Virus record (IMG/VR): IMGVR_UViG_3300021338_000003
Coordinates: 124,001-188,000 of that record
Reading direction: 5' to 3' (one strand)
Length of the DNA: 64,000 nucleotides
The position numbers were made by a program, and so were the translations under genes. A model generated the notes under the pieces. That model ran no database searches. It saw only the letters and a list, made by a program, of their open reading frames with translations, and was not told the DNA's origin. Below are positions 30,459 to 46,459 of the stretch, piece by piece. Numbering within the stretch: position 1 is the first letter of the stretch; each line of letters starts with the position of its first letter.

Positions 30459-30776
30459 GGAGGAAGTTGAAGTATAGAGTGAAGTTGAGGTTCAAAAATC
30501 CCTGGCGTCTGGGCCACGAGGCCCATGGAGGTTCGAATCCTTCCCTGCCCATTCTGGGGGCAGGTGGCGAAACGGTAGACGCGGATGTCAGGTATTAGTG
30601 AGACTTTTCCTCCTCAAACTTAGAACATCTCCCTGTGGTTGAGGTCTCAGCTGCTAGGGTCGCCCGTTTGGAAGACATAGGTTCGAATCCTATACCCCCC
30701 ATTCACCCTGCGGGGGGTTGGTATAGCGGTAGTACGTCCTCTCTTAGGCTCTGACTCTGGCTTAAACGTCGTCCTC
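30459..30776 (+). ncRNA. structured RNA with two circularly permuted tRNA-like modules (YrlA/Y-RNA-like)
   Basis: Twice: T arm (GG-TTCGAAT-CC), 7-bp acceptor-like stem closed by a loop, then D arm; no anticodon loop; ends partly complementary. Confidence 0.75.
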
Positions 30777-33471: not shown

Positions 33472-33546
33472 GGGTCTCTAGCTCAATTGGTTGGTAGCAT
33501 TCGGCTCATACCCGAACGGTTCTGGGTTCAAGTCCCAGGGGACCCA
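33472..33546 (+). tRNA. tRNA with CAT anticodon (Ile2 or Met)
   Basis: Cloverleaf GGGTCTC/GGGACCC, anticodon arm TTCGG-CTCATAC-CCGAA, T arm CTGGG-TTCAAGT-CCCAG; no CCA. Confidence 0.88.
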
Positions 33547-33550
33547 TCAC

Positions 33551-33611
33551 ATATCCTGCAGTGAGTGTCCTTCACCCCATCAGTCGCTTGTCTGCACTCA
33601 CTGCAGGATAT
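33551..33611. repeat. perfect 17-bp inverted repeat between two tRNA genes
   Basis: ATATCCTGCAGTGAGTG / CACTCACTGCAGGATAT with a 27-nt loop. Confidence 0.85.
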
Positions 33612-33619
33612 TTGTTTTT

Positions 33620-33701
33620 GGGGTTGTGACGGAATTGGTAGACGACTCCCGCTCAAAATGGGAGGCCGAAAGGCGTGAGGGTTCGAATCCCTCCTTCCCC
33701 A
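33620..33701 (+). tRNA. tRNA-Leu(CAA)
   Basis: GGAATTGGTAGAC D arm, CTCAAAA loop, long variable arm, GAGGG-TTCGAAT-CCCTC; two T-T mismatches in acceptor stem. Confidence 0.85.
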
Positions 33702-33717
33702 CTTTCAGGAGACCGCC

Positions 33718-34413
33718 GTGAGAACGAAGAGCCTTGATGAGAGGAAGCTCGATCGGGCTATCGAGATCGCCGAGCAACTCGCTGCGGAACCTGTTGAAAA
33801 CCCGGCGTATACAGACGCATGGAAGAAGACGGCAAGTTCCTGGCGCTGCGCGCGTGGACTCGGAGAGTTCGAAAAAGGTGTCAAAATGGCCACGGACCGT
33901 TTTCGCAAGCTCTTTGTCGAGTGCTCTGACTTCTCGGAGGCAAAAGAACCATTTGGTGATGGGCCATGGAGAAGGCAGGCCACGAAGTTCAAATCCTTCC
34001 TCGATGAGGTTGAGAATATGAACAATGACTCTCATGACGCTGCCTTTGGGCCTGGTCACCTGGTCCCGGGATTCAAAGCATCATCAGTGGATGAGATTGT
34101 AGAACGCATGAGACGGGCAAAGGCTCGGCTATCTCGGGTAGGGCACCGAGAGGATACGAAGCCATCGTTGCGTCGTATCCGGGCTATGTACCCGCCCACA
34201 AACGACCAGATCATGAGCTTGTTCCTCGAAACTTCCTCCTCCGAAAAGGAAGCCGCTATCGGTAGGGCCTGTGATTGGTGTTCCAGTGCGTTCGATACTC
34301 TTTCCGACCGGTCGTTGGCAAATGAATGGGCAAAATGTGCCGCATTTGTGTCATCAATTCGGGACGCATACATTCGCGGTCGGTTGGACCAAGAAGCAGA
34401 AAGGAATAATTAA
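33718..34413 (+). CDS. hypothetical protein
   Basis: AGGAG RBS, GTG start. Confidence 0.6.
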   Translation: MRTKSLDERKLDRAIEIAEQLAAEPVENPAYTDAWKKTASSWRCARGLGEFEKGVKMATDRFRKLFVECSDFSEAKEPFGDGPWRRQATKFKSFLDEVENMNNDSHDAAFGPGHLVPGFKASSVDEIVERMRRAKARLSRVGHREDTKPSLRRIRAMYPPTNDQIMSLFLETSSSEKEAAIGRACDWCSSAFDTLSDRSLANEWAKCAAFVSSIRDAYIRGRLDQEAERNN

Positions 34414-34418
34414 CTGCT

Positions 34419-34503
34419 GGAAGTGTGACCGAGTGGCTTAAGGTAGCGGTCTTGAAAACCGCCGCGTTTCAAAGCGCCGTGGGTTCGAATCCCACCACTT
34501 CCG
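34419..34503 (+). tRNA. tRNA-Ser(TGA)
   Basis: GGAAGTG/CACTTCC acceptor, CTTGAAA loop, long variable arm. Confidence 0.92.
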
Positions 34504-34509
34504 TTTCAA

Positions 34510-34583
34510 TGGGGTGTCGCCAAGCTGGTTAAGGCATCGGTTTTTGGCACCGATATGCGAAGGTTCGAATCCTTCCACCCCAA
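34510..34583 (+). tRNA. tRNA-Gln(TTG)
   Basis: TGGGGTG/CACCCCA acceptor, TCGGT-TTTTGGC-ACCGA anticodon arm. Confidence 0.9.
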
Positions 34584-34662
34584 CTCTTCACTTGGATATG
34601 CATATGACCCCCTATCAACTCGCACTGCGCCGATATTTCACTTCCATTTTCGGAGGAATATC

Positions 34663-34944
34663 GTGCCACACATCAACCACTCCCGAGGGGAGACTCGCGA
34701 ATTTGTGTTTCGCAAGCGAAAGACTGGCAAGAAATACAGGCAGGGGCGCCGCCGCAAGAATGGCAAGCGCTACCAAGTAGCAAGGTTGGTATTCAGAGCC
34801 TGGTGTCCTTGTTGTATGGTGCCACTTGACAGAAGCAAGTACTGGGGACGGTACGTAAACAGGATCGAAAGAGAAGCGGCTCGAAAGGAAATCCAGAACG
34901 TGCTTCACGAGATGGATGGGGTTACGGCTCTGTTTCTTGATTAG
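34663..34944 (+). CDS. small basic hypothetical protein
   Basis: GGAGG RBS before GTG 34663. Confidence 0.55.
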   Translation: MPHINHSRGETREFVFRKRKTGKKYRQGRRRKNGKRYQVARLVFRAWCPCCMVPLDRSKYWGRYVNRIEREAARKEIQNVLHEMDGVTALFLD

Positions 34945-34955
34945 GAGGAAGTCTC

Positions 34956-35291
34956 ATGTCCATATCAGAACTCCTGGAGCCGTCAGAAATCCTGGAAGAA
35001 GAGGTTGCAGCCTTCGGGGATGACTGGATGCTTCCAGAAGGTATACGTGTCAAATACTCGGATGCATATGTAGTCGCTCGTTACGAAGACACATCAGGAT
35101 CTCTGATCGAAGTAACACGTGAAGCAATGCCCGCAGTGTTCTACTGTGTATCCTACCGAGGGTTTGAGATTGGGTTTGATTCTGGAACAGATGCAGCACA
35201 ATATGCCGCAGCAGTAGCGAAGTCCCTTATGTTTGGGGCGACTATCTCTAAAAATGAATCAGGTGTCCATGAATACGAAAGTGGGGGTTAG
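34956..35291 (+). CDS. hypothetical protein
   Basis: AGGAGG RBS. Confidence 0.6.
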   Translation: MSISELLEPSEILEEEVAAFGDDWMLPEGIRVKYSDAYVVARYEDTSGSLIEVTREAMPAVFYCVSYRGFEIGFDSGTDAAQYAAAVAKSLMFGATISKNESGVHEYESGG

Positions 35292-35293
35292 TC

Positions 35294-35587
35294 ATGATAT
35301 GCGTTTCTTGCGGACAGGAAACCAAGGGCACTGATCTCTGTGAGCCTGAGTGCGCAGTGAAGGTCGAGGGTAGCACTCTGTGGGAACCCAAGTGGGCCCC
35401 GGTGGGCGGAGGCAAATTCCTCCTGTCTACCGAGGATCGTCTTGCGTTGCGCAACGCACCACCTCCGCCTAACCGGTATGGGTGGTGCGTTTTTCTTGCT
35501 TCTGAGAAGACCGTCCCCGCCGAGGCCAACGCCCGATGGGTGTCGCTGAACGATACGGACGAGATGATCCGACAAGGATCGTCATAA
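35294..35587 (+). CDS. hypothetical protein with N-terminal Cys cluster
   Basis: CVSC...CEPEC. Confidence 0.5.
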   Translation: MICVSCGQETKGTDLCEPECAVKVEGSTLWEPKWAPVGGGKFLLSTEDRLALRNAPPPPNRYGWCVFLASEKTVPAEANARWVSLNDTDEMIRQGSS

Positions 35588-35598
35588 CGATCCTAGGC

Positions 35599-35652
35599 TT
35601 GACATTTCTCGGATGTCGTGCTATAATACTTGTATCGATGGTCATTGAAAAC
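35599..35652 (+). promoter_or_regulatory. consensus sigma70 promoter plus boxA-like element heading the tRNA/ncRNA unit
   Basis: TTGACA(35599)-17 nt-TATAAT(35622); GGTCATTGAAAAC at 35640-35652. Confidence 0.8.
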
Positions 35653-35702
35653 ACAATACGGATTTCGGAAGCCGGGGAAAGGACACCCCGGCATTGCGAG
35701 AA

Positions 35703-35775
<73 letters not shown>

Positions 35776-35784
35776 TTTTCACAT

Positions 35785-35858
35785 GGGTTTGTAGCTCAGC
35801 TGGATAGAGCATCGGCCTTCTAAGCCGGCGGTCGTGGGTTCGAATCCCGCCAGACCCA
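35785..35858 (+). tRNA. tRNA-Arg(TCT)
   Basis: GGGTTTG/CAGACCC acceptor, CTTCTAA loop. Confidence 0.92.
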
Positions 35859-35869
35859 TCTTTTTCTTT

Positions 35870-36175
35870 CGAGGCGCTAGGCCCTGTCCCGAGAATGCCG
35901 GGACCACCTAGGTGCGGCGCTCAAACCTCGAAAGGGGCGCGGTCACGAGGCGTTACACGTGACTAGGGTAGGGTGTGGTAGCCCCTACTTCGTCCAGAAA
36001 TCTGAAAGGTGATGTACACACCCGGAGGTGGGAGGACGTTCGGTCAGATCAACCGCCGAATTACAATTAAACACCAGAGGTCAGCTGCGGGGCCTCGAAT
36101 TTGGTCGAAAGACTACAACAAGAGCGGCAGCAGTCAAGTGAACTCGGAGGCATCCGAGGAACCTGCTTGGCATTC
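35870..36175 (+). ncRNA. candidate ~300-nt structured RNA
   Basis: Consecutive hairpins with three GNRA tetraloops; flanked by T-rich spacers; no credible ORF. Confidence 0.5.
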
Positions 36176-36195
36176 TTTTTCGATTTTTTGCAAAC

Positions 36196-36293
36196 GCTCC
36201 CAGCAGGGCGACCGTGGGTCGGATGGACAGTCCGCCCCTCCTCGGATCGTTCCTACTCGCCGGCCCTAAGTCGGTGCAACCCCTGCTGGGGGT
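36196..36293 (+). ncRNA. candidate ~100-nt structured RNA or domain
   Basis: 13-bp closing stem GCTCCCAGCAGGG / CCCTGCTGGGGGT. Confidence 0.45.
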
Positions 36294-36299
36294 CATCTT

Positions 36300-37420
36300 G
36301 GGTCTACCGACGTTCTAGTCCGTAGGCTTTCGCTCCGAAGGTGATGCTGCATCGGCTACCCTAATCTTCGGCGAATATAGGGAAACAGACTGCTAGATGG
36401 TGCGGTTCAATGAGAACCCCCATTGAAGTCATCGATAACCTGCCCGGCCAGTTAGGGAAGCGATGGTTGCGATTGAGGTTGAGATTGGTAATGCAATGCT
36501 ATCCACGCGCCGAGGTGCCTTCTAGGGTAGCATTCCCCTCAATCGCTTTCTTTTCGGGAGTCTATTGGAAGTCTCCCGTTTGTGGAATATGTGCTGGAAT
36601 GCTGTCCCTGGGCGCAGCACATATGTGATGTCAGGGAAACCTAGAGCTGGTGACAAAATGCGATGACATACTCATAAGGCTGGCTCCGGCCTTATACCAA
36701 AAGTCTGAAACTTTCAGACAGGGCACACATATCCGACTCAAGTGTTGCCGAGTACCAGTCCTGCTCGAAGCATCAAGGATACCGCCCCCTCTGGACTGGG
36801 AGGTGGGTGTTGAGTTCGAATCTCTTTTGGGTCATTGAGGGGTTATCTGGTGTTCCACCTCCCGGGGTGACCCCTCAAAATAAGTAGGGAATAGGAACGT
36901 AGAAGGCGCGGGCGCACGTGTCCTTTGAAGTCATCGATAACCCCCGTAGACGCTGAAGCCATTTGGTGAATGCCGAGGGAATAAGCGATGGCACTTAATC
37001 TTGCGGACTGGGACGACGCAGGGGTGCTGTTCATTCAGGCCACACTCTAGGGTGTAGGAGAGTTTGAACAGCAAAACCAGTCCCCGAAGCCGCCAGCCCC
37101 TATATATTAGGAGGGGACGGAACTGGGGCAAGACCTCCTGAAGTGGGGCAGGGTTAGCCGGACTACCTTCGAAGATACCCGGAAATCGTGCAATGAGGAC
37201 TCGTGTGGGCCTGTCAAAATTTTGACAGGGAAAGCATCGGAGCGTAAGCTTTGGGACAGAAATGTCCGGGGACCCAAATATAAGACGCGTAGCCAATGAC
37301 GCGACCATCGAATTCTGGCATTCCTGAACTCATCAGGAATTAGTCCAAGGCTATAACCGGACAGTGAAAAAGAACATGAGCGGATGGGAACGTTAGACCC
37401 CGGAAGGGAACGTTAGACCC
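36300..37420 (+). ncRNA. candidate ~1.1-kb ornate ncRNA (GOLLD/ROOL-like context)
   Basis: Terminal helix GGGTCTA(CCG)ACGTTC / GAACGTTAGACCC; many 8-10 bp stems; internally duplicated motif block; no credible ORF. Confidence 0.65.
37381..37420 (+). repeat. 20-bp tandem duplication
   Basis: CGGATGGGAACGTTAGACCC followed by CGGAAGGGAACGTTAGACCC. Confidence 0.9.
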
Positions 37421-37515
37421 GGCTTTTCAGCAAATCACCAGCAAAATATGCGGTTTCGACCGTTTTGTCGCTACCATGGTGACAGAGAGTATGGCTAGAC
37501 TCTCACCATGCACAT

Positions 37516-37579
37516 AAACGGCCGCTTCCCGAGGCATTCCTTCTTGTCATGCCTTCTTAGTCTTGGGAAGCGGCCGTTT
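37516..37579. terminator. long hairpin between the ncRNA unit and the convergent ART gene
   Basis: AAACGGCCGCTTCCCGAG / CTTGGGAAGCGGCCGTTT. Confidence 0.6.
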
Positions 37580-37691
37580 CTGTATTTGACGTTTCTGCCC
37601 CTTGGGCAGACGATTCTGCCACCACATATTGATGGTGGTGACGTCTCCCGGGCAGGATATATCCGCGTGTGCCCTGACGATGGCCTCTTTC

Positions 37692-38825
37692 TCACGATCG
37701 TTGTACATGGTCTAGCACCACTCGGCGCACCGAGCTTGAGATGGATTTGAGAAGACGAGTCATTTCGTTTGCTATCTCGTCTATCTCCTTGCGAGTCTTA
37801 ACTCCGGGCTGATTTAGGGTCTGGTATCTGGCCCCGAAAGTGTCCTGAAGACCCTCTTTGTACCTCTTTTGGATAGCGGGGGAGGCATACTTGGTAAGAC
37901 CATGGAGAGATCCCTGGCCATAGAACGTCAAGTGGCTATTGGGGTGAGCTTTGATGGTCTCTATGGTATCATCAACAAGGTCTCCTATCGGTTTGGTGAA
38001 CTTTCGTATCCTGGGGTCCGACCGAACGTCTGAAGGAGTCCCGAAGAACCCCGCTGCCACCAGTCCAAGCATGGTGGACAAATGCACTTGGACTTCGACC
38101 CCTCCATCCCATTGGGTTACGGATTTGACTACATATGGTTTCCCGATTTTGTCTCTATTGGACCATACCTGGCCCATAAGGTATCGGGTATCCGAGTTCA
38201 ATTCAGATTCGTGCATGTTAGCAATATATTGGAAAAGACCGCCCGTCTCGTACCCTTCGATGTTTTGGCCCCTCCTGATGAGGTCCTCCCACTCATTGTC
38301 TTCAATCAGACCTCTAATTACCTCGTTGACATCCTTCCCGTGAAGCATATCCCGGAAGCGGCGGATGACTTTGACTACCTCAACCCTCATCTTTCCAGGT
38401 AGGGCTAGGATTTCGTTCTCTGCCGCATACCGGGTCTTGGTGACGTCAATACCCTCCTTGAGGACAGTGCGAAGAATGACCCCACCTTCCCCTAGAAGGA
38501 TTTCTCCTGGGTTGTCAGATATCAGCTTCGCCAGCTGCCTTGTGATGTTGAAAGCTGGAACCGTGGTGGCAAATTGAAACGCCGTTTCGATGTGGGGGCT
38601 CCACGAGGTCAAAGAATCCGAAGAAATAATACCATTCTGGATTTTGGACAGGAACTCCTGAAGTTTTTCCTCGGTGTCGAAACGAAGCCCTCGGAATACC
38701 TCTTTGGACCCTCTAAGAGGGTATCGCGAGACAAGGCTGTCTCGATAAGAAGTAGGGACTGGTCCTTCACCCCGAACATAGTAGAACAATGCCCGGTCAT
38801 CAGGGTCGAGGTCGTAGGGGTCCAT
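37692..38825 (-). CDS. ADP-ribosyltransferase, R-S-E type (Alt/Mod/VIP2-like)
   Basis: VFRGL...LTSWS...AFQFA...GVIL...ENEILALPG. Confidence 0.7.
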   Translation of the reverse strand: MDPYDLDPDDRALFYYVRGEGPVPTSYRDSLVSRYPLRGSKEVFRGLRFDTEEKLQEFLSKIQNGIISSDSLTSWSPHIETAFQFATTVPAFNITRQLAKLISDNPGEILLGEGGVILRTVLKEGIDVTKTRYAAENEILALPGKMRVEVVKVIRRFRDMLHGKDVNEVIRGLIEDNEWEDLIRRGQNIEGYETGGLFQYIANMHESELNSDTRYLMGQVWSNRDKIGKPYVVKSVTQWDGGVEVQVHLSTMLGLVAAGFFGTPSDVRSDPRIRKFTKPIGDLVDDTIETIKAHPNSHLTFYGQGSLHGLTKYASPAIQKRYKEGLQDTFGARYQTLNQPGVKTRKEIDEIANEMTRLLKSISSSVRRVVLDHVQRS

Positions 38826-42559: not shown

Positions 42560-42994
42560 TGCCCCGATGTGCTGATTGCATCCACCTCACACTTCGTCCC
42601 GAACTTCCTCAGAATGACTGTGATGTTATCGAGGAAGGAGGTGATGACGATACTGATAATTGGGTATGGGAACATTGGGGCGGTGACGACGTTGACCAGG
42701 ACCCTATCTGCCCTCGATTTGCACGTCGGAGCGAAGAGAGGTAAAATAGGGGTTTTGGGGGTGCATTATGGATAAGGCTCAAGTCAACGCCATCTTTGCT
42801 TCTTACCGCTGGGGACACATCACGTGGGAGCAGGTCAAGCAAAAGCTCGGGGACCGGGCAGAGGCTGAAGCCAAGAAGCGTGGCATATCAGCCCCCGAAA
42901 AGCTGGACAAGCTCAACAAGTAGACATTCGGACAGGCCCTTCCCTGGCAACTTTTCAGGGAAGGGCTCATTTGTATTCGCACCCCGAGAGAATA

Positions 42995-45900
42995 ATGACC
43001 GACGAAATTTTGGGCAAGTATTTCGTGTGTTTGATGCCTCCCAAGATGGCAGAGATACACCAACGCATCCGTCGTGACCTCGAAAAGAAGTTCGGGGAGC
43101 CTATCGACCATTCGGGACCCCCTCATGTGACCGTGAAGTACATCGGGCCCGTGACTCGTGGTGACCATGATGCCCTCTTGGGCAACGTGATGACTCGTTT
43201 TGCTCTCAGGAGTCATCGCAGCCCCTTCCACCTTCGGATTACTGGCATAGACTCTTTCGACCGTATCGAAGGCGGCGGAACACCCCTCTTCCTTCGTGTC
43301 GAGTGTCCCGAGCTTCATGACTTTCGGAAAGAGATGAACGAGGGATGGGACCCCTTCTCGCAACCTGAGAAATTTCCAGACTTTAAGCCCCACATGACCC
43401 TAGGGTATATCAACCGGGACCTGACTTCTGAGGAGAAGGAGTGGCTGGCCAAATATGAGGTCAAACTCACCTCTATCTGTCCTACCGTGGTCCTGACCCG
43501 AAACGCTTATGAAAACGTTCTCGTTCTCAACCTTTCGAATGACCTGACGGCCGCCACTCTAGAGGACTTCAATAAGGCCCCGGACGCGGAGGCCGGAGAG
43601 GACCCTGTCATTCACGAGGTGGCCATCATCCCCCTGCATGAGCGCACCGATGATAACCCAGCCTGGAAGGCTATCGTCGAGGCAGCGTTGGCAAAAACCC
43701 GTTGGTACCACATTCGCTCTAGCGATGCCCGAGGTCTCCACGACCAATGGACCAAACTCTATGGTGAAGGCCCCAACCCCTTCGACCCCCTTTCTAACGT
43801 AGACAAAAATACGGCCTATCTGGCCGGATTTGATGAAGATGACAAGCTCGTTGTCGGTGGAATAGTGCAGGGTGTCTCTTGGGATGGTGACCGTGGGATA
43901 TACGTTCACTACATCGAATCCAAGACCTCCTTCGCTGTGGCTAAACTCATCCAGGATTGGCAGAGAGAGTATGACTTCATCACGGCGGACCTGGAAAACA
44001 AGGGTCTACGACGCCTAGCCTATCGAGCCGGGTTCAAAGAATACGACAAGGGCGTGTACCTTTGGCACCGAGGTACTCCGGGTCCTATTCTGATGTCCTG
44101 GGTTGGTGATAGCACCCTCATGGACCCCTCGAAGTTGACAGCACTTACGAGGGCTCAAGCTCTAACCGCTCGATGGATTGAGGACTCTCAAGTTAAGTCC
44201 GTACCTGTTCACTCCTGGGGGTGGATTGGTGCCGATGGTTCTATAGCCTACGGCACTGGGGACAATGACTATCACGCCCAGCATGCCTTCAGAAAGGTCA
44301 AGGAAGAATACCCATCTGATTTCCGAACTCTTCCAGGGCTGAAGTATTTCACCCAAGCCAGAAACATAGAAGAGGCAGAACGAGCCATTAACAAAGCTCT
44401 TGAGAATGACCCTGATCCATTTGCAGCTGAGGACCTTTTCACGGACCTCATCAGTGAAGCATCAGGCATTCTATTTGGTCATGGCTGGATTCGAGTTACT
44501 CATCCAAATCCTGGCCAATTTGGGTTCAACGGTCTATCTTGGGAGGATGCGTCTGACCGGGCCAAAGAGACCATTCTTGCATACCTGGCCACCTCCACCA
44601 AGCAGTGGAACCTAGACCCAGAGAGTGCTATAGTCTGGATTGACTTCAGCCTAGAAGCCCAAGGCAAGTATACCATGGCCGAGTTCATCGACCGCTTCTA
44701 TGGCCGAAAAGAGGTTGATGAGTTCTTCGGGATTATCATGGCCCGGTCTGACCTCTCCCCGACCTCTGAGGACTACGCGGAGTTCAAGGAGAGCCATGGT
44801 CCTAACCCCGGGTGCTCTCTAGGCCGGGACAAAGATGGGTATTACGTCTACACTCACCGGGGCCGATCGCCCTCCTATAGCAGTCCTGGCGCCATCCCAG
44901 CCTCGAAAGTCAAGCAAATCGAGCGCACAGGTAGTGCTATAGAGGCCAGTACCAAACGCCGATTTTTCCATGGTACCAGCACCGCCTTCCTAGACTCCAT
45001 CAAGCGTGAAGGTCTTAAGGCTACCCCTCCCCAACGGGTATGGGAAGGCAGCCTAGAAGCCATGGATGGATACGTCTACCTGACCACCAGCCTTTGGACT
45101 GCTACCGACCACGCTATGACTGCCTCCCGAAAGTTTCCCGGCGAGAAACTCATTCTCGTGGTCGAATTGGACCGAGATGACCCCCGTATCTTCGCCGACG
45201 AAGACCTCGTTCCCAAGGTATACGGACGCATTGTAGAGCAATGGATGCATCTGGTCCCGAGGCAGGAGCGGATGGAGCTTCACGAGCTTTGGGAGTTGGT
45301 CCATGGTCACCCTCCTGATCCTATCGGGACCAACTCCAGAGAGCACGCCGAGCTTCTGGCCAAGATTGGCGAAGGAATCGGGGACCGCAATGACCATTCC
45401 TTGGGTGGCCTACTCAAAAGGTTTGTCAATCGGGACAACCTCACTATTCCCCGGTTTGCCAAGCTCTACTTCGAAGAGACCGACTCCTCCGACTACCCTC
45501 GGTTCATCAAGTCTGTCACCGAGCGTCTGAACCGAGACATGACCAAATATCTCAAGCACATCGGAATGACCCGATTCATTGACCCTGATAGGGTCGTTGA
45601 TTTCTTGATGAGTTCGACCATCGATGACCTGGACAATGCCTCCAATGAAAGCCAGGGCAACCGGGCTCGATGGTTCGTTCAGCATCGAGACGAATTGGCC
45701 CGAGAGTGGCCCGAATGGTTTGGCCCCGAGGCTGGAATGCTGTCTGGTGAGATGCCAACAGTCGCTGTTCGTGATGACGTCAAGCCCGACGAATACTGGG
45801 TTATTCGGGGCTCATTGCGTGATGTGAAGCGCTATGACGACCTGGAGAATCGAGGAGAGCGTGTTGCTGGTGTTCTGACTGCCTCGACCAAGTGGGATGA

Positions 45901-46459
45901 CGGCATCCTCCTCCATGGGACCGACAAGAAATTCGACCGCTTCAAGGCCGGCGCCTATTGGCGCGGTCACAGCGAGGAAGGCCATGGCCTAATATACTTC
46001 TCGGACCCCAACCGCCGGCCCGGCAGGAAGACCCAGGCCGAACACATCGCCGAGGCTCGGGGATGGTTGGCTGTGGTCCGTTTCGATGAGGCCCGTTCCA
46101 AGCCCTTCCAGCCGACCATCGACGACCAGGCGGCAGACATCGTGAGGGAGGCCGCCAAGCACGAGTGGGTGCAGGCCAGCAATGAGCGGCTCCGCCAGGC
46201 CCTGGGCAACCATATTCCCTATGAGTGGGCCTTCATCATCGCCAAACTCGCCATTCCGAAGGGCTACAACACCTTCAAGTTCTGGGAGCCGTCTGTCCAC
46301 GAATATAGCATCGCCATATCGGATCCGGACCTAGTGGAAATCGTCGAATGGCAGCCCCGAGGCCGGAATGCCATCATGATCGGAAAAATGGTGACAGAGG
46401 AAGTCGAGTTCTGGAAGGCAATTCAAGAGAGAATCGCTGCGAAGCGAGGGGAGTCCTGA
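42995..46459 (+). CDS. polyvalent multidomain protein: 2H phosphoesterase, GNAT-like, GWxxxxG domain, small THR domain, two ART-like domains
   Basis: PHVT and PHMT (2H); FFHGTS...GL...VYLT...DED; LLHGTDKKFDRF...IYFS. Confidence 0.75.
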   Translation: MTDEILGKYFVCLMPPKMAEIHQRIRRDLEKKFGEPIDHSGPPHVTVKYIGPVTRGDHDALLGNVMTRFALRSHRSPFHLRITGIDSFDRIEGGGTPLFLRVECPELHDFRKEMNEGWDPFSQPEKFPDFKPHMTLGYINRDLTSEEKEWLAKYEVKLTSICPTVVLTRNAYENVLVLNLSNDLTAATLEDFNKAPDAEAGEDPVIHEVAIIPLHERTDDNPAWKAIVEAALAKTRWYHIRSSDARGLHDQWTKLYGEGPNPFDPLSNVDKNTAYLAGFDEDDKLVVGGIVQGVSWDGDRGIYVHYIESKTSFAVAKLIQDWQREYDFITADLENKGLRRLAYRAGFKEYDKGVYLWHRGTPGPILMSWVGDSTLMDPSKLTALTRAQALTARWIEDSQVKSVPVHSWGWIGADGSIAYGTGDNDYHAQHAFRKVKEEYPSDFRTLPGLKYFTQARNIEEAERAINKALENDPDPFAAEDLFTDLISEASGILFGHGWIRVTHPNPGQFGFNGLSWEDASDRAKETILAYLATSTKQWNLDPESAIVWIDFSLEAQGKYTMAEFIDRFYGRKEVDEFFGIIMARSDLSPTSEDYAEFKESHGPNPGCSLGRDKDGYYVYTHRGRSPSYSSPGAIPASKVKQIERTGSAIEASTKRRFFHGTSTAFLDSIKREGLKATPPQRVWEGSLEAMDGYVYLTTSLWTATDHAMTASRKFPGEKLILVVELDRDDPRIFADEDLVPKVYGRIVEQWMHLVPRQERMELHELWELVHGHPPDPIGTNSREHAELLAKIGEGIGDRNDHSLGGLLKRFVNRDNLTIPRFAKLYFEETDSSDYPRFIKSVTERLNRDMTKYLKHIGMTRFIDPDRVVDFLMSSTIDDLDNASNESQGNRARWFVQHRDELAREWPEWFGPEAGMLSGEMPTVAVRDDVKPDEYWVIRGSLRDVKRYDDLENRGERVAGVLTASTKWDDGILLHGTDKKFDRFKAGAYWRGHSEEGHGLIYFSDPNRRPGRKTQAEHIAEARGWLAVVRFDEARSKPFQPTIDDQAADIVREAAKHEWVQASNERLRQALGNHIPYEWAFIIAKLAIPKGYNTFKFWEPSVHEYSIAISDPDLVEIVEWQPRGRNAIMIGKMVTEEVEFWKAIQERIAAKRGES

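What the first reader, a model, noticed from the sequence alone, without database searches (positions are those of the whole stretch)
36300..37420. Candidate ~1.1-kb ornate ncRNA with a duplicated core and long-range pairing
Seen: (a) The 5' end GGGTCTA(CCG)ACGTTC (36300-36315) is complementary to GAACGTTAGACCC, present twice in tandem at 37388-37400 and 37408-37420. (b) A collinear motif block repeats with ~500-nt spacing: TAGGGAA (36378/36885), TAGAwGGyGCGG (36394/36900), identical TTGAAGTCATCGATAACC (36423/36925), AAGCGATGG (36458/36983; CGATG pairs with CATCG) and TCTAGGGT (36521/37046), with variable stems between. (c) Loop sequence GTGCCTTCTA (36515-36524) of unit 1 is complementary to TAGAAGGCGC (36900-36909) of unit 2. 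(d) There are several 10-bp stems, e.g. GCGATTGAGG/CCTCAATCGC and ATATGTGCTG/CAGCACATAT. Established: GOLLD and ROOL are large phage-associated RNAs often next to tRNAs, typically about 600-800 nt. Inference: an enlarged member of those classes or a new giant RNA with covalently duplicated domains, possibly self-assembling.
Basis: partly seen in the sequence, partly recalled or inferred. Interest (0 to 1): 0.85.

Follow-up and report, generated by a model that had tools for sequence, protein, structure and literature searches.

The report
Orphan giant phage RNA candidate
A 1.8-kb gene-free stretch of an uncultured 251-kb phage, lying behind two tRNA genes and a self-cleaving ribozyme, looks like a very large folded RNA of a new type, but no relative was found anywhere, so its structure and function remain unproven.

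Summary
The region is real non-coding sequence. All six frames carry all three stop codons, the period-3 signal is the lowest in the window, and the JGI gene caller calls nothing there.

A consensus sigma-70 promoter (35599-35627) drives tRNA-Lys, tRNA-Arg and a twister-sister ribozyme (35869-35933). That ribozyme should cut at 35922/35923. About 1.65 kb of ORF-free sequence then runs to a 22-bp hairpin (37512-37583).

- **Supported:** the duplicated motif block (identical 18-mer plus three collinear motifs) is significant. So is the enrichment of 9-10-bp hairpins.
- **Corrected:** The best long-range pairing is 36298-36338 with 37237-37277 (0/200 shuffles), enclosing a 980-nt core.
- **Rejected:** Rfam gives no GOLLD, ROOL, OLE or HEARO hit even at E<=10.
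- **Not obtainable:** I found no homologue in viral, metagenome, genome or GenBank phage collections, and the five assemblies of this phage are identical. Covariation could not be tested.

Best reading (confidence about 0.5): a new, orphan, large structured phage RNA occupying the same tRNA-island niche as GOLLD and ROOL. It is released by the ribozyme and built partly from two paralogous modules. Self-assembly is speculation.

The parts
35599..35627 (+). Consensus sigma-70-type promoter (TTGACA, 17 nt, TATAAT, with TG) upstream of the tRNA-ribozyme-RNA unit
   Evidence: 12 of 12 matches; sequence
35703..35775 (+). tRNA-Lys (UUU)
35784..35860 (+). tRNA-Arg (UCU)
35869..35933 (+). Twister-sister self-cleaving ribozyme. 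Predicted cut between C35922 and A35923, which would give the downstream RNA a 5'-OH end
   Evidence: RF02681, 38.7 bits (gathering 34), E 5.5e-5 in the window. L1 strands GCUAG/GCUCA match the conserved G5-G9 and G59-A63 of PMC5660989
35923..36162 (+). 5' leader of short local hairpins, ORF-free. Inferred to belong to the same transcript
   Evidence: No Rfam hit
36196..36293 (+). Hairpin domain closed by a 13-bp stem (ensemble p 0.98)
   Evidence: (I7)
36298..36338 (+). 5' arm of the long-range closing helix I1
   Evidence: 30 Watson-Crick pairs, 4 G-U on the + strand, 1 A-C
36376..36546 (+). Module 1. Motifs: A at 36378, B at 36394, C (18-mer) at 36423-36440, D at 36458, E at 36521. Helix Ha is 36396-400/36420-24. 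Ten-bp stems are 36469-78/36537-46 and 36495-504/36525-34
36587..36830 (+). Central hairpins between the modules: 36587-96/36615-24, 36674-95, 36703-19, 36783-809
36883..37085 (+). Module 2. Motifs: A at 36885, B at 36900, C (18-mer) at 36925-36942, D at 36983, E at 37046. Helix Ha is 36902-06/36922-26. Helix Hb is 36930-36/36986-92. Further stem 37025-33/37065-73
37237..37277 (+). 3' arm of the long-range closing helix I1
37381..37420 (+). Tandem 20-mer, two copies. The AACGUU cores can pair with each other
   Evidence: (D2)
37512..37583 (.). 22-bp hairpin (91% complementary) between the RNA and the convergent 377-aa gene. Probably a bidirectional terminator; the U-tail is weak
   Evidence: I2; z about -6; p 0.88

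Best explanation
The stretch 35861-37691 of this 251-kb uncultured phage encodes no protein.

Shown: the non-coding status, the upstream elements, the I1 pairing potential and the duplicated motif block.

Inferred: the stretch is transcribed on the + strand from the consensus promoter at 35599-35627, as the tail of a tRNA-Lys / tRNA-Arg operon. The twister-sister ribozyme cuts the transcript between C35922 and A35923. The downstream RNA of about 1.3-1.7 kb is thereby freed with a defined 5'-hydroxyl end. It ends at or near the hairpin 37512-37583. Its core is a 980-nt domain closed by a 31-bp interrupted helix (36298-36338 with 37237-37277). This core is packed with 9-14-bp hairpins. It contains two paralogous modules of about 170-200 nt that keep the same five motifs in the same order.

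Speculative: the RNA acts as a large architectural RNA during infection, as GOLLD and ROOL do from the same tRNA-island niche. The two modules could give an internal pseudo-dimer. The AUCGAU and AACGUU palindromes could offer sites for module-module or molecule-molecule contacts.
For: - **Non-coding:** all three stop codons occur in all six frames. The period-3 signal is 1.1-1.4, against 3.2-31 in every other 1.5-kb bin. No gene is called between 35587 and 37547 in the JGI or ENA annotations. The small ORFs have no Pfam or PHROG match.
- **Transcription context, all on one strand:** promoter, two tRNAs, twister-sister above gathering score, catalytic-loop residues in place, terminal hairpin.
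- **Structure:** I1 is the top inverted repeat of the region (0/200 shuffles; 0/100), with 4 G-U against 1 A-C. There are nine perfect local stems against about 2 per 2 kb elsewhere. The 980-nt core folds at z -4.1 to -5.5, the lowest of 16 segments tested.
- **Selection:** the 18-mer is identical in both modules while the flanks have diverged to noise. Collinear motifs occur in 1/300 shuffles. The only variable pair of helix Ha changes U-A to A-U.
- **Niche:** GOLLD and ROOL are phage RNAs 'often near tRNA islands' (PMC12286853).
Against: - **No homologue:** covariation is therefore untested.
- **No expression data.**
- **Weak thermodynamic evidence:** local 200-nt z-scores are modest. Two coding controls reach z -4.3 and -4.6. 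The minus strand folds equally well relative to its own shuffles, so the strand is inferred from context only.
- **Unsettled module fold:** thermodynamics gives motif D different partners in the two modules.
- **Not conserved in the nearest relative:** in the only related phage contig found, tRNA-Arg(UCU) is followed by about 360 nt of unrelated non-coding DNA, not by this RNA.
- **Possible early stop:** a weak hairpin plus U-run at 36154-36190 could end transcription before the core.
- **DNA-level alternative:** palindromic cores (ATCGAT, AACGTT) also fit protein-binding DNA sites.
Confidence: 0.5

Rival explanations
1. The region yields several independent small or medium RNAs rather than one giant molecule. 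These could be a roughly 250-nt leader RNA ending at the U-run near 36190 and two paralogous module RNAs.
For: A weak terminator-like site lies at 36154-36179. The modules are separable hairpin clusters. Most predicted helices are local.
Against: No promoter-like site lies inside 35860-37690, and no copy of the phage's own promoter motif lies there on the + strand. The significant helix I1 spans both modules. The U-run 36173-82 is predicted to pair with an A-run at 37365-74 (p 0.89).
Confidence: 0.15
2. This is a DNA-level element: a regulatory, replication or partition region. Its repeats would be protein-binding sites. These are two near-palindromic 18-mers 502 bp apart, and three copies of a 13-15-mer (two direct, one inverted).
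For: The repeats have palindromic cores, ATCGAT and AACGTT. The z-score is symmetric between strands.
Against: There is no GC-skew inflection and no AT-rich stretch. There are only two or three copies of each site. Conservation extends over five collinear motifs spanning about 150 nt with variable spacers, which is unlike an operator. A compensatory change occurs in helix Ha. The 15-mer is not reused elsewhere in 64 kb.
Confidence: 0.15
3. This is non-functional spacer: read-through tail of the tRNA operon or fully decayed genes. Its repeats and stems would be chance or neutral leftovers.
For: It is an orphan, with no homologue. It is absent at the syntenic spot of the nearest relative. Thermodynamic scores overlap with the coding controls.
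Against: A 20-of-21 identical core sits in flanks that have diverged to noise, which requires selection. I1 and the hairpin excess exceed shuffles. AGGGAA is strongly over-represented (7 against 0.59 expected). The five assemblies are identical, but that says nothing on constraint.
Confidence: 0.12
4. This is a non-autonomous mobile element (MITE-like), 36298-37277, bounded by 41-bp imperfect terminal inverted repeats and inserted next to a tRNA gene.
For: The 41-nt inverted repeat at the ends of a 980-bp ORF-less segment. tRNA genes are common insertion sites.
Against: It is single-copy. The 18-mer core occurs nowhere else in IMG/VR, 241 million metagenome records or GTDB genomes. No target-site duplication is visible at 36290-97 / 37278-85. 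No transposase lies nearby. The G-U bias in the arms favours RNA pairing.
Confidence: 0.05

Closest known systems
GOLLD RNA (Rfam RF01998)
   Same: A large (>800 nt) ornate non-coding RNA of phages and prophages, often beside tRNA islands (PMC12286853). Here a gene-free region of at least 1 kb, rich in hairpins, follows tRNA genes on the same strand in a phage.
   Different: No covariance-model match even at E<=10. No sign of the conserved GOLLD 3' domain. This RNA is larger, carries an internal duplication, and is preceded by a twister-sister ribozyme. It has no family, whereas GOLLD has many homologues.
ROOL RNA (Rfam RF03087)
   Same: A phage or prophage large structured RNA near tRNA islands with unknown function. 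It is held together by kissing loops and A-minor contacts.
   Different: No covariance-model match. This RNA is about twice the size. Multimerisation is untested here.
Theta (minimal HDV-like) ribozymes next to phage tRNAs (PMC10879173)
   Same: A small self-cleaving ribozyme placed directly downstream of a phage tRNA gene in the same transcript.
   Different: A different ribozyme class (twister-sister). HDV-like ribozymes cut at their own 5' end and so trim the tRNA trailer. Twister-sister cuts in the 3' strand of loop L1 (C62-A63), so here it mainly defines the 5' end of the downstream RNA.
Twister-sister ribozyme family (RF02681), for the flanking element only
   Same: Score above the gathering threshold. 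P1, the L1 loop strands and the SL4 loop G, A, G and C residues are conserved.
   Different: One stem-loop of the consensus is deleted. A7 is U, which is tolerated per PMC5660989. The SL4 U30-A34 pair is swapped to A-U. Activity is untested.

Membership tests
GOLLD (RF01998) | Significant match to the family covariance model (conserved 3' domain) | tested here: not met
   No hit at gathering threshold or at E<=10 on 2.5-kb and 1.3-kb slices
GOLLD (RF01998) | Phage or prophage location near a tRNA island | tested here: met
   Six tRNAs at 33472-35860 on the same strand, in a 251-kb viral contig
ROOL (RF03087) | Significant match to the family covariance model | tested here: not met
ROOL (RF03087) | RNA-only multimeric nanocage | not testable with these tools
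   Needs mass photometry or cryo-EM of the transcript
OLE, HEARO, raiA, group I/II introns, RNase P, tmRNA and the other Rfam 15 families | Match to the covariance model | tested here: not met
   The only hits in 35500-38000 are two tRNAs, twister-sister and chance-level hits with E>0.01
Twister-sister ribozyme (flanking element) | Covariance-model score at or above the gathering threshold | tested here: met
   38.7 bits against 34
Twister-sister ribozyme (flanking element) | Conserved L1 residues C6, A8, G9 and G59, C60, U61, C62, A63 | tested here: met
   GCUAG at 35875-79 and GCUCA at 35919-23. Only the non-conserved A7 is changed
Twister-sister ribozyme (flanking element) | Site-specific self-cleavage | not testable with these tools
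   Needs in-vitro transcription and a cleavage assay
Structured ncRNA in general | Covariation supporting helices across homologues | not testable with these tools
   No homologue in any collection. The only comparison is module 1 against module 2: one compensatory pair in Ha, and one G-U to G-C change in Hb
MITE / non-autonomous transposon | Multiple copies sharing terminal inverted repeats, plus a target-site duplication | tested here: not met
   Inverted repeats are present, but the element is single-copy everywhere searched and has no flanking duplication

The most novel reading that the evidence does not exclude
This is a third, unrelated class of giant phage tRNA-island RNA. It would be a molecule of more than 1 kb, cut free from a tRNA operon by a twister-sister ribozyme. 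Its two paralogous modules would make it an internal pseudo-dimer that assembles, alone or as multimers, into an RNA-only particle, in the manner of GOLLD and ROOL nanocages.
Probability: 0.12. Interest if true: 0.9.

Novelty: new variant of a known kind. Interest (0 to 1): 0.55.

Why it matters
Only a handful of bacterial and phage RNAs longer than 500 nt are known to be elaborately folded. Two of them, GOLLD and ROOL, sit in phage tRNA islands, have recently been shown to build RNA-only cages, and still have no known function.

A further, unrelated and larger RNA in the same niche would suggest that the niche, rather than one fold, is what phages select for. It would also add two features not described for GOLLD or ROOL in the sources read here: a ribozyme-defined 5' end and a covalent duplication of a module. 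Both give direct experimental handles, namely a cleavage assay, module-swap constructs and oligomer measurements.

Because the phage is uncultured and the RNA is an orphan, its present value is as a well-delimited candidate for in-vitro work and for covariance-model mining. It is not an established RNA class.

Tried and rejected
- **Rfam membership:** gathering-threshold and permissive scans gave nothing beyond the tRNAs and twister-sister.
- **Coding explanations:** stop-codon census including single-codon recoding, period-3 signal, and Pfam and PHROG searches on nine small ORFs. All were negative.
- **Homologue search by DNA:**
  - blastn 'distant' against 50,697 phage records found nothing.
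  - The exact 18-mer in IMG/VR, JGI metagenomes and GTDB genomes gave only the source contig plus chance hits, checked with nhmmer.
  - A 15-mer and three gapped motif patterns in IMG/VR gave chance hits only.
  - The best-looking hit, L245/L274, lies antisense to a coding sequence.
- **Homologue search by synteny:**
  - The 377-aa neighbour has two distant relatives without synteny.
  - The 231-aa neighbour has none.
  - The 406-aa protein belongs to a widespread domain family, so it is not informative.
  - I walked the related contig ZHAN22-2 scaffold_37 to its tRNA-Met / tRNA-Arg(UCU) region. No similar RNA follows.
- **Population variation:** five assemblies of the phage are 100% identical.
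- **tRNA-like element inside the RNA:** only a poor ARAGORN call at an 80% threshold, which I rejected.
- **CsrA-sponge idea:** GGA density equals the window background (24.4 against 22.8 per kb), so I rejected it.
- **Replication origin:** no skew inflection.
- **Helix 36163-82/37365-83:** not significant against shuffles.

Full report
**Origin and setting.** The window is part of one viral contig, IMGVR_UViG_3300021338_000003 (also Ga0213839_1000090), 250,817 bp long. The same phage was assembled, base for base, from a Logan run and from three ENA assemblies. One of those is a 250,597-bp contig. Most of its proteins have no Pfam or PHROG family. The nearest GenBank phages are very distant: about 27% identity over part of one protein, to Ralstonia phage RsoM2USA and Virus Rctr197k. 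This is a sparsely sampled jumbo-phage lineage.

**Is it non-coding?** Yes.
- Between the end of tRNA-Arg (35860) and the stop of the convergent 377-aa gene (37692), every one of the six frames carries TAA, TAG and TGA several times. Reassignment of a single stop codon therefore cannot open a frame.
- The period-3 Fourier signal is 1.1-1.4, which is noise level. Every other 1.5-kb bin of the window gives 3.2-31. This also argues against a recently decayed gene.
- The JGI and ENA gene calls leave 35587-37547 empty.
- Nine small ORFs in the region match no Pfam or PHROG family at a meaningful level.

**What flanks it.**
- A perfect sigma-70-type promoter lies at 35599-35627: TTGACA, 17 nt with TG, TATAAT.
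- It is followed on the + strand by tRNA-Lys(UUU) at 35703-35775 and tRNA-Arg(UCU) at 35784-35860.
- Nine nucleotides later comes a twister-sister ribozyme at 35869-35933. It scores 38.7 bits against a gathering score of 34, with E 5.5e-5 for the whole window.
- The two strands of its catalytic loop L1 read GCUAG and GCUCA. These match the conserved G5-C6-A7-A8-G9 and G59-C60-U61-C62-A63 of the crystal structure paper. Only A7 differs, and that paper reports A7 as non-conserved and replaceable by U (PMC5660989).
- Cleavage in that family is at C62-A63, which here is C35922/A35923. The cut lies near the 3' end of the ribozyme. The ribozyme therefore stays on the tRNA side, and the downstream RNA starts at 35923 with a 5'-hydroxyl.
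- No promoter-like site, and no + strand copy of the phage's own promoter motif, lies inside the region.
- The first strong terminator-like structure is the 22-bp hairpin at 37512-37583. It faces the convergent 377-aa gene.
- A weak hairpin plus U-run at 36154-36190 could stop some transcripts. In the full-length fold, however, that U-run pairs with an A-run at 37365-74 (p 0.89).

- (a) The complementarity of 36300-36315 to the tandem 13-mers exists. The same 5' bases have a much better partner, though. The arms 36298-36338 and 37237-37277 (I1) form 30 Watson-Crick and 4 G-U pairs over 41 positions. I1 is the highest-scoring inverted repeat in the whole 1678-nt region, at 19 against 11.8+-1.2 in 200 shuffles, none of which reach it.
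- (b) The duplication is real. The 18-mer occurs at 36423 and 36925 and nowhere else in 64 kb, even with three mismatches. Motifs A, D and E add six shared 7-mers at offsets 507-525, against a mean of 0.59 in shuffles; 1 of 300 shuffles reaches six. Between the motifs the sequences no longer align. This is the pattern expected of an old duplication under selection at a few positions.
- (c) The 10-bp complementarity between the module-1 loop and motif B of module 2 is present. It is only weakly favoured (p 0.14), and a match of this kind is expected by chance in 1.1 kb.
- (d) Stable hairpins are enriched: nine perfect stems of >=9 bp in 36001-38000, against about two per 2 kb elsewhere.

**Module anatomy.** Both modules can form helix Ha, between motif B and the start of motif C. 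The pairing is GAUGG/CCAUU in module 1 and GAAGG/CCUUU in module 2. The single variable pair changes U-A to A-U, and a different small hairpin sits at the tip of each. Both can also form helix Hb, between GUCAUCG of motif C and CGAUGGY of motif D. Each module additionally has a second possible partner for D upstream (CAUYG plus CCCUNN). The energy model chooses that upstream partner in module 1 and Hb in module 2. The fold of the module is therefore not settled. One compensatory pair between two paralogues is weak evidence, with a likelihood ratio of about 3.

**Thermodynamics.** The 980-nt I1-closed core folds at -378 kcal/mol, with z -4.1 from 20 shuffles and -5.5 from 12 shuffles. It is the lowest of 16 equal-sized segments of the window. 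Two coding controls nevertheless reach -4.3 and -4.6. The minus strand scores z -4.3. Folding energy therefore supports structure only mildly and cannot assign the strand. The strand call rests on the promoter, the tRNAs, the ribozyme and a 4:1 excess of G-U over A-C in I1.

**Known families.** cmscan against all 4227 Rfam 15 families returned no large-RNA family. This covers GOLLD, ROOL, OLE, HEARO, raiA, introns, RNase P and tmRNA. The scans used the gathering threshold on the window and E<=10 on slices of 2.5, 1.3 and 0.4 kb. Membership in GOLLD or ROOL is thus tested and not met. The resemblance is one of niche and kind. Both are large phage RNAs 'often near tRNA islands', of unknown function, now known to form RNA-only cages (PMC12286853). 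A self-cleaving ribozyme directly after a phage tRNA has a precedent in the HDV-like theta ribozymes (PMC10879173). Those cut at their 5' end and serve the tRNA. The twister-sister geometry here serves the downstream RNA.

**Search for relatives.** This was the main effort, and it failed.
- DNA searches found only the source contig. They comprised blastn against GenBank phages, the exact 18-mer in IMG/VR, 241 million metagenome records and GTDB genomes, and a 15-mer plus three gapped motif patterns in IMG/VR.
- Every other hit failed nhmmer and inspection.
- Neighbouring proteins have two, zero or non-syntenic relatives.
- One truly related phage contig shares several genes. I walked it to its tRNA-Met / tRNA-Arg(UCU) region. 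There the tRNA-Arg is followed by a 107-nt tRNA-like gene and about 360 nt of unrelated non-coding DNA.

The RNA is therefore an orphan, it is not conserved at the syntenic spot of its nearest known relative, and covariation cannot be assessed.

**Alternatives.**
- A DNA-level role is possible. The repeats have palindromic cores (ATCGAT, AACGTT) and the z-score is symmetric between strands. Against it, there is no skew inflection or AT-rich unwinding region, copy numbers are low, and the conserved unit spans five motifs with variable spacers.
- A MITE bounded by I1 is contradicted by its single-copy status and the absence of a target duplication.
- Pure junk is contradicted by the 20-of-21 conserved core in diverged flanks, by I1, and by the strong excess of AGGGAA (7 against 0.59 expected, p 3e-6).
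- Several smaller RNAs instead of one large RNA cannot be excluded.

**Verdict.** 'New giant structured RNA' remains the best reading at about even odds. Its boundaries should be corrected to roughly 35923-37590, with a 36298-37277 core, a corrected closing helix, and a ribozyme-defined 5' end. How it works beyond release by the ribozyme is inference by analogy. Self-assembly is speculation that the palindromic motifs make testable.

Noticed in passing
window 35869-35933 (+): Twister-sister self-cleaving ribozyme 9 nt downstream of tRNA-Arg. Predicted cut at 35922/35923.
   Followed up: yes
window 2513, 30012, 31988, 38867, 50203, 57416, 57791 (+); 15610, 31936 (-): A recurrent promoter-like motif: TTGCAC, a 17-nt spacer ending GTGCCATGT, then TAAAAT or TATAAT. 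There are 16 matches at <=3 mismatches against 2.9 expected. It is probably the phage's own class of sigma-70-type promoters. The tRNA/RNA unit uses a different, consensus promoter.
   Followed up: partly
window 30527-30565 and 30674-30727 (+): Two T-arm-plus-hairpin elements resembling the 3' part of a tRNA or of two-piece tmRNA. They give partial cyano_tmRNA hits at E 0.054 and 6.8e-4. They are not called as tRNAs at default settings. ARAGORN at 80% threshold gives a tRNA-Phe(aaa)-like call at 30460-30551.
   Followed up: partly
window 42971-46459 (+): A 1162-aa ORF with an N-terminal 2H phosphoesterase / 2'-5' RNA ligase (LigT-like) domain, E 3.7e-13. It is an RNA-end-processing enzyme encoded 5 kb from a ribozyme that makes 2',3'-cyclic phosphate and 5'-OH ends. 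Any link is speculative.
   Followed up: no
window 35923-37600 (+): AGGGAA is the most over-represented hexamer, with 7 copies against 0.59 expected. TAGGG occurs 7 times against 1.27 expected. Three of the AGGGAA copies lie in the duplicated motifs. Overall GGA density is at background, so this is not a CsrA-sponge pattern.
   Followed up: partly
window 37600-37691: Beyond the terminal hairpin, three stretches of 10-13 nt are complementary to 36435-47, 36586-97 and 36717-28. The top-3 score is 31 against 25.9+-2.1, reached by 7 of 300 shuffles. Four control segments are not enriched. The RNA may extend past 37583, or this is chance.
   Followed up: partly
window 37692-38825 (-): A lone minus-strand 377-aa gene, convergent with the RNA, with no Pfam or PHROG family. 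It has only two homologues (48% and 42% identity) among 5.8 billion proteins.
   Followed up: partly
window 33551-33611 and 35400-35600 (+): A 17-bp perfect hairpin lies in the spacer between tRNA-Met and tRNA-Leu. An unusually stable fold (z -5.5) lies inside the called 97-aa ORF just upstream of the promoter.
   Followed up: no
L224 11836-12390 (ENA ZHAN22-2 scaffold_37): In the only related phage contig, tRNA-Arg(UCU) is followed by a 107-nt tRNA-like gene with a long insertion (33 bits) and about 360 nt of hairpin-rich non-coding DNA. That DNA is unrelated in sequence to the window RNA.
   Followed up: partly
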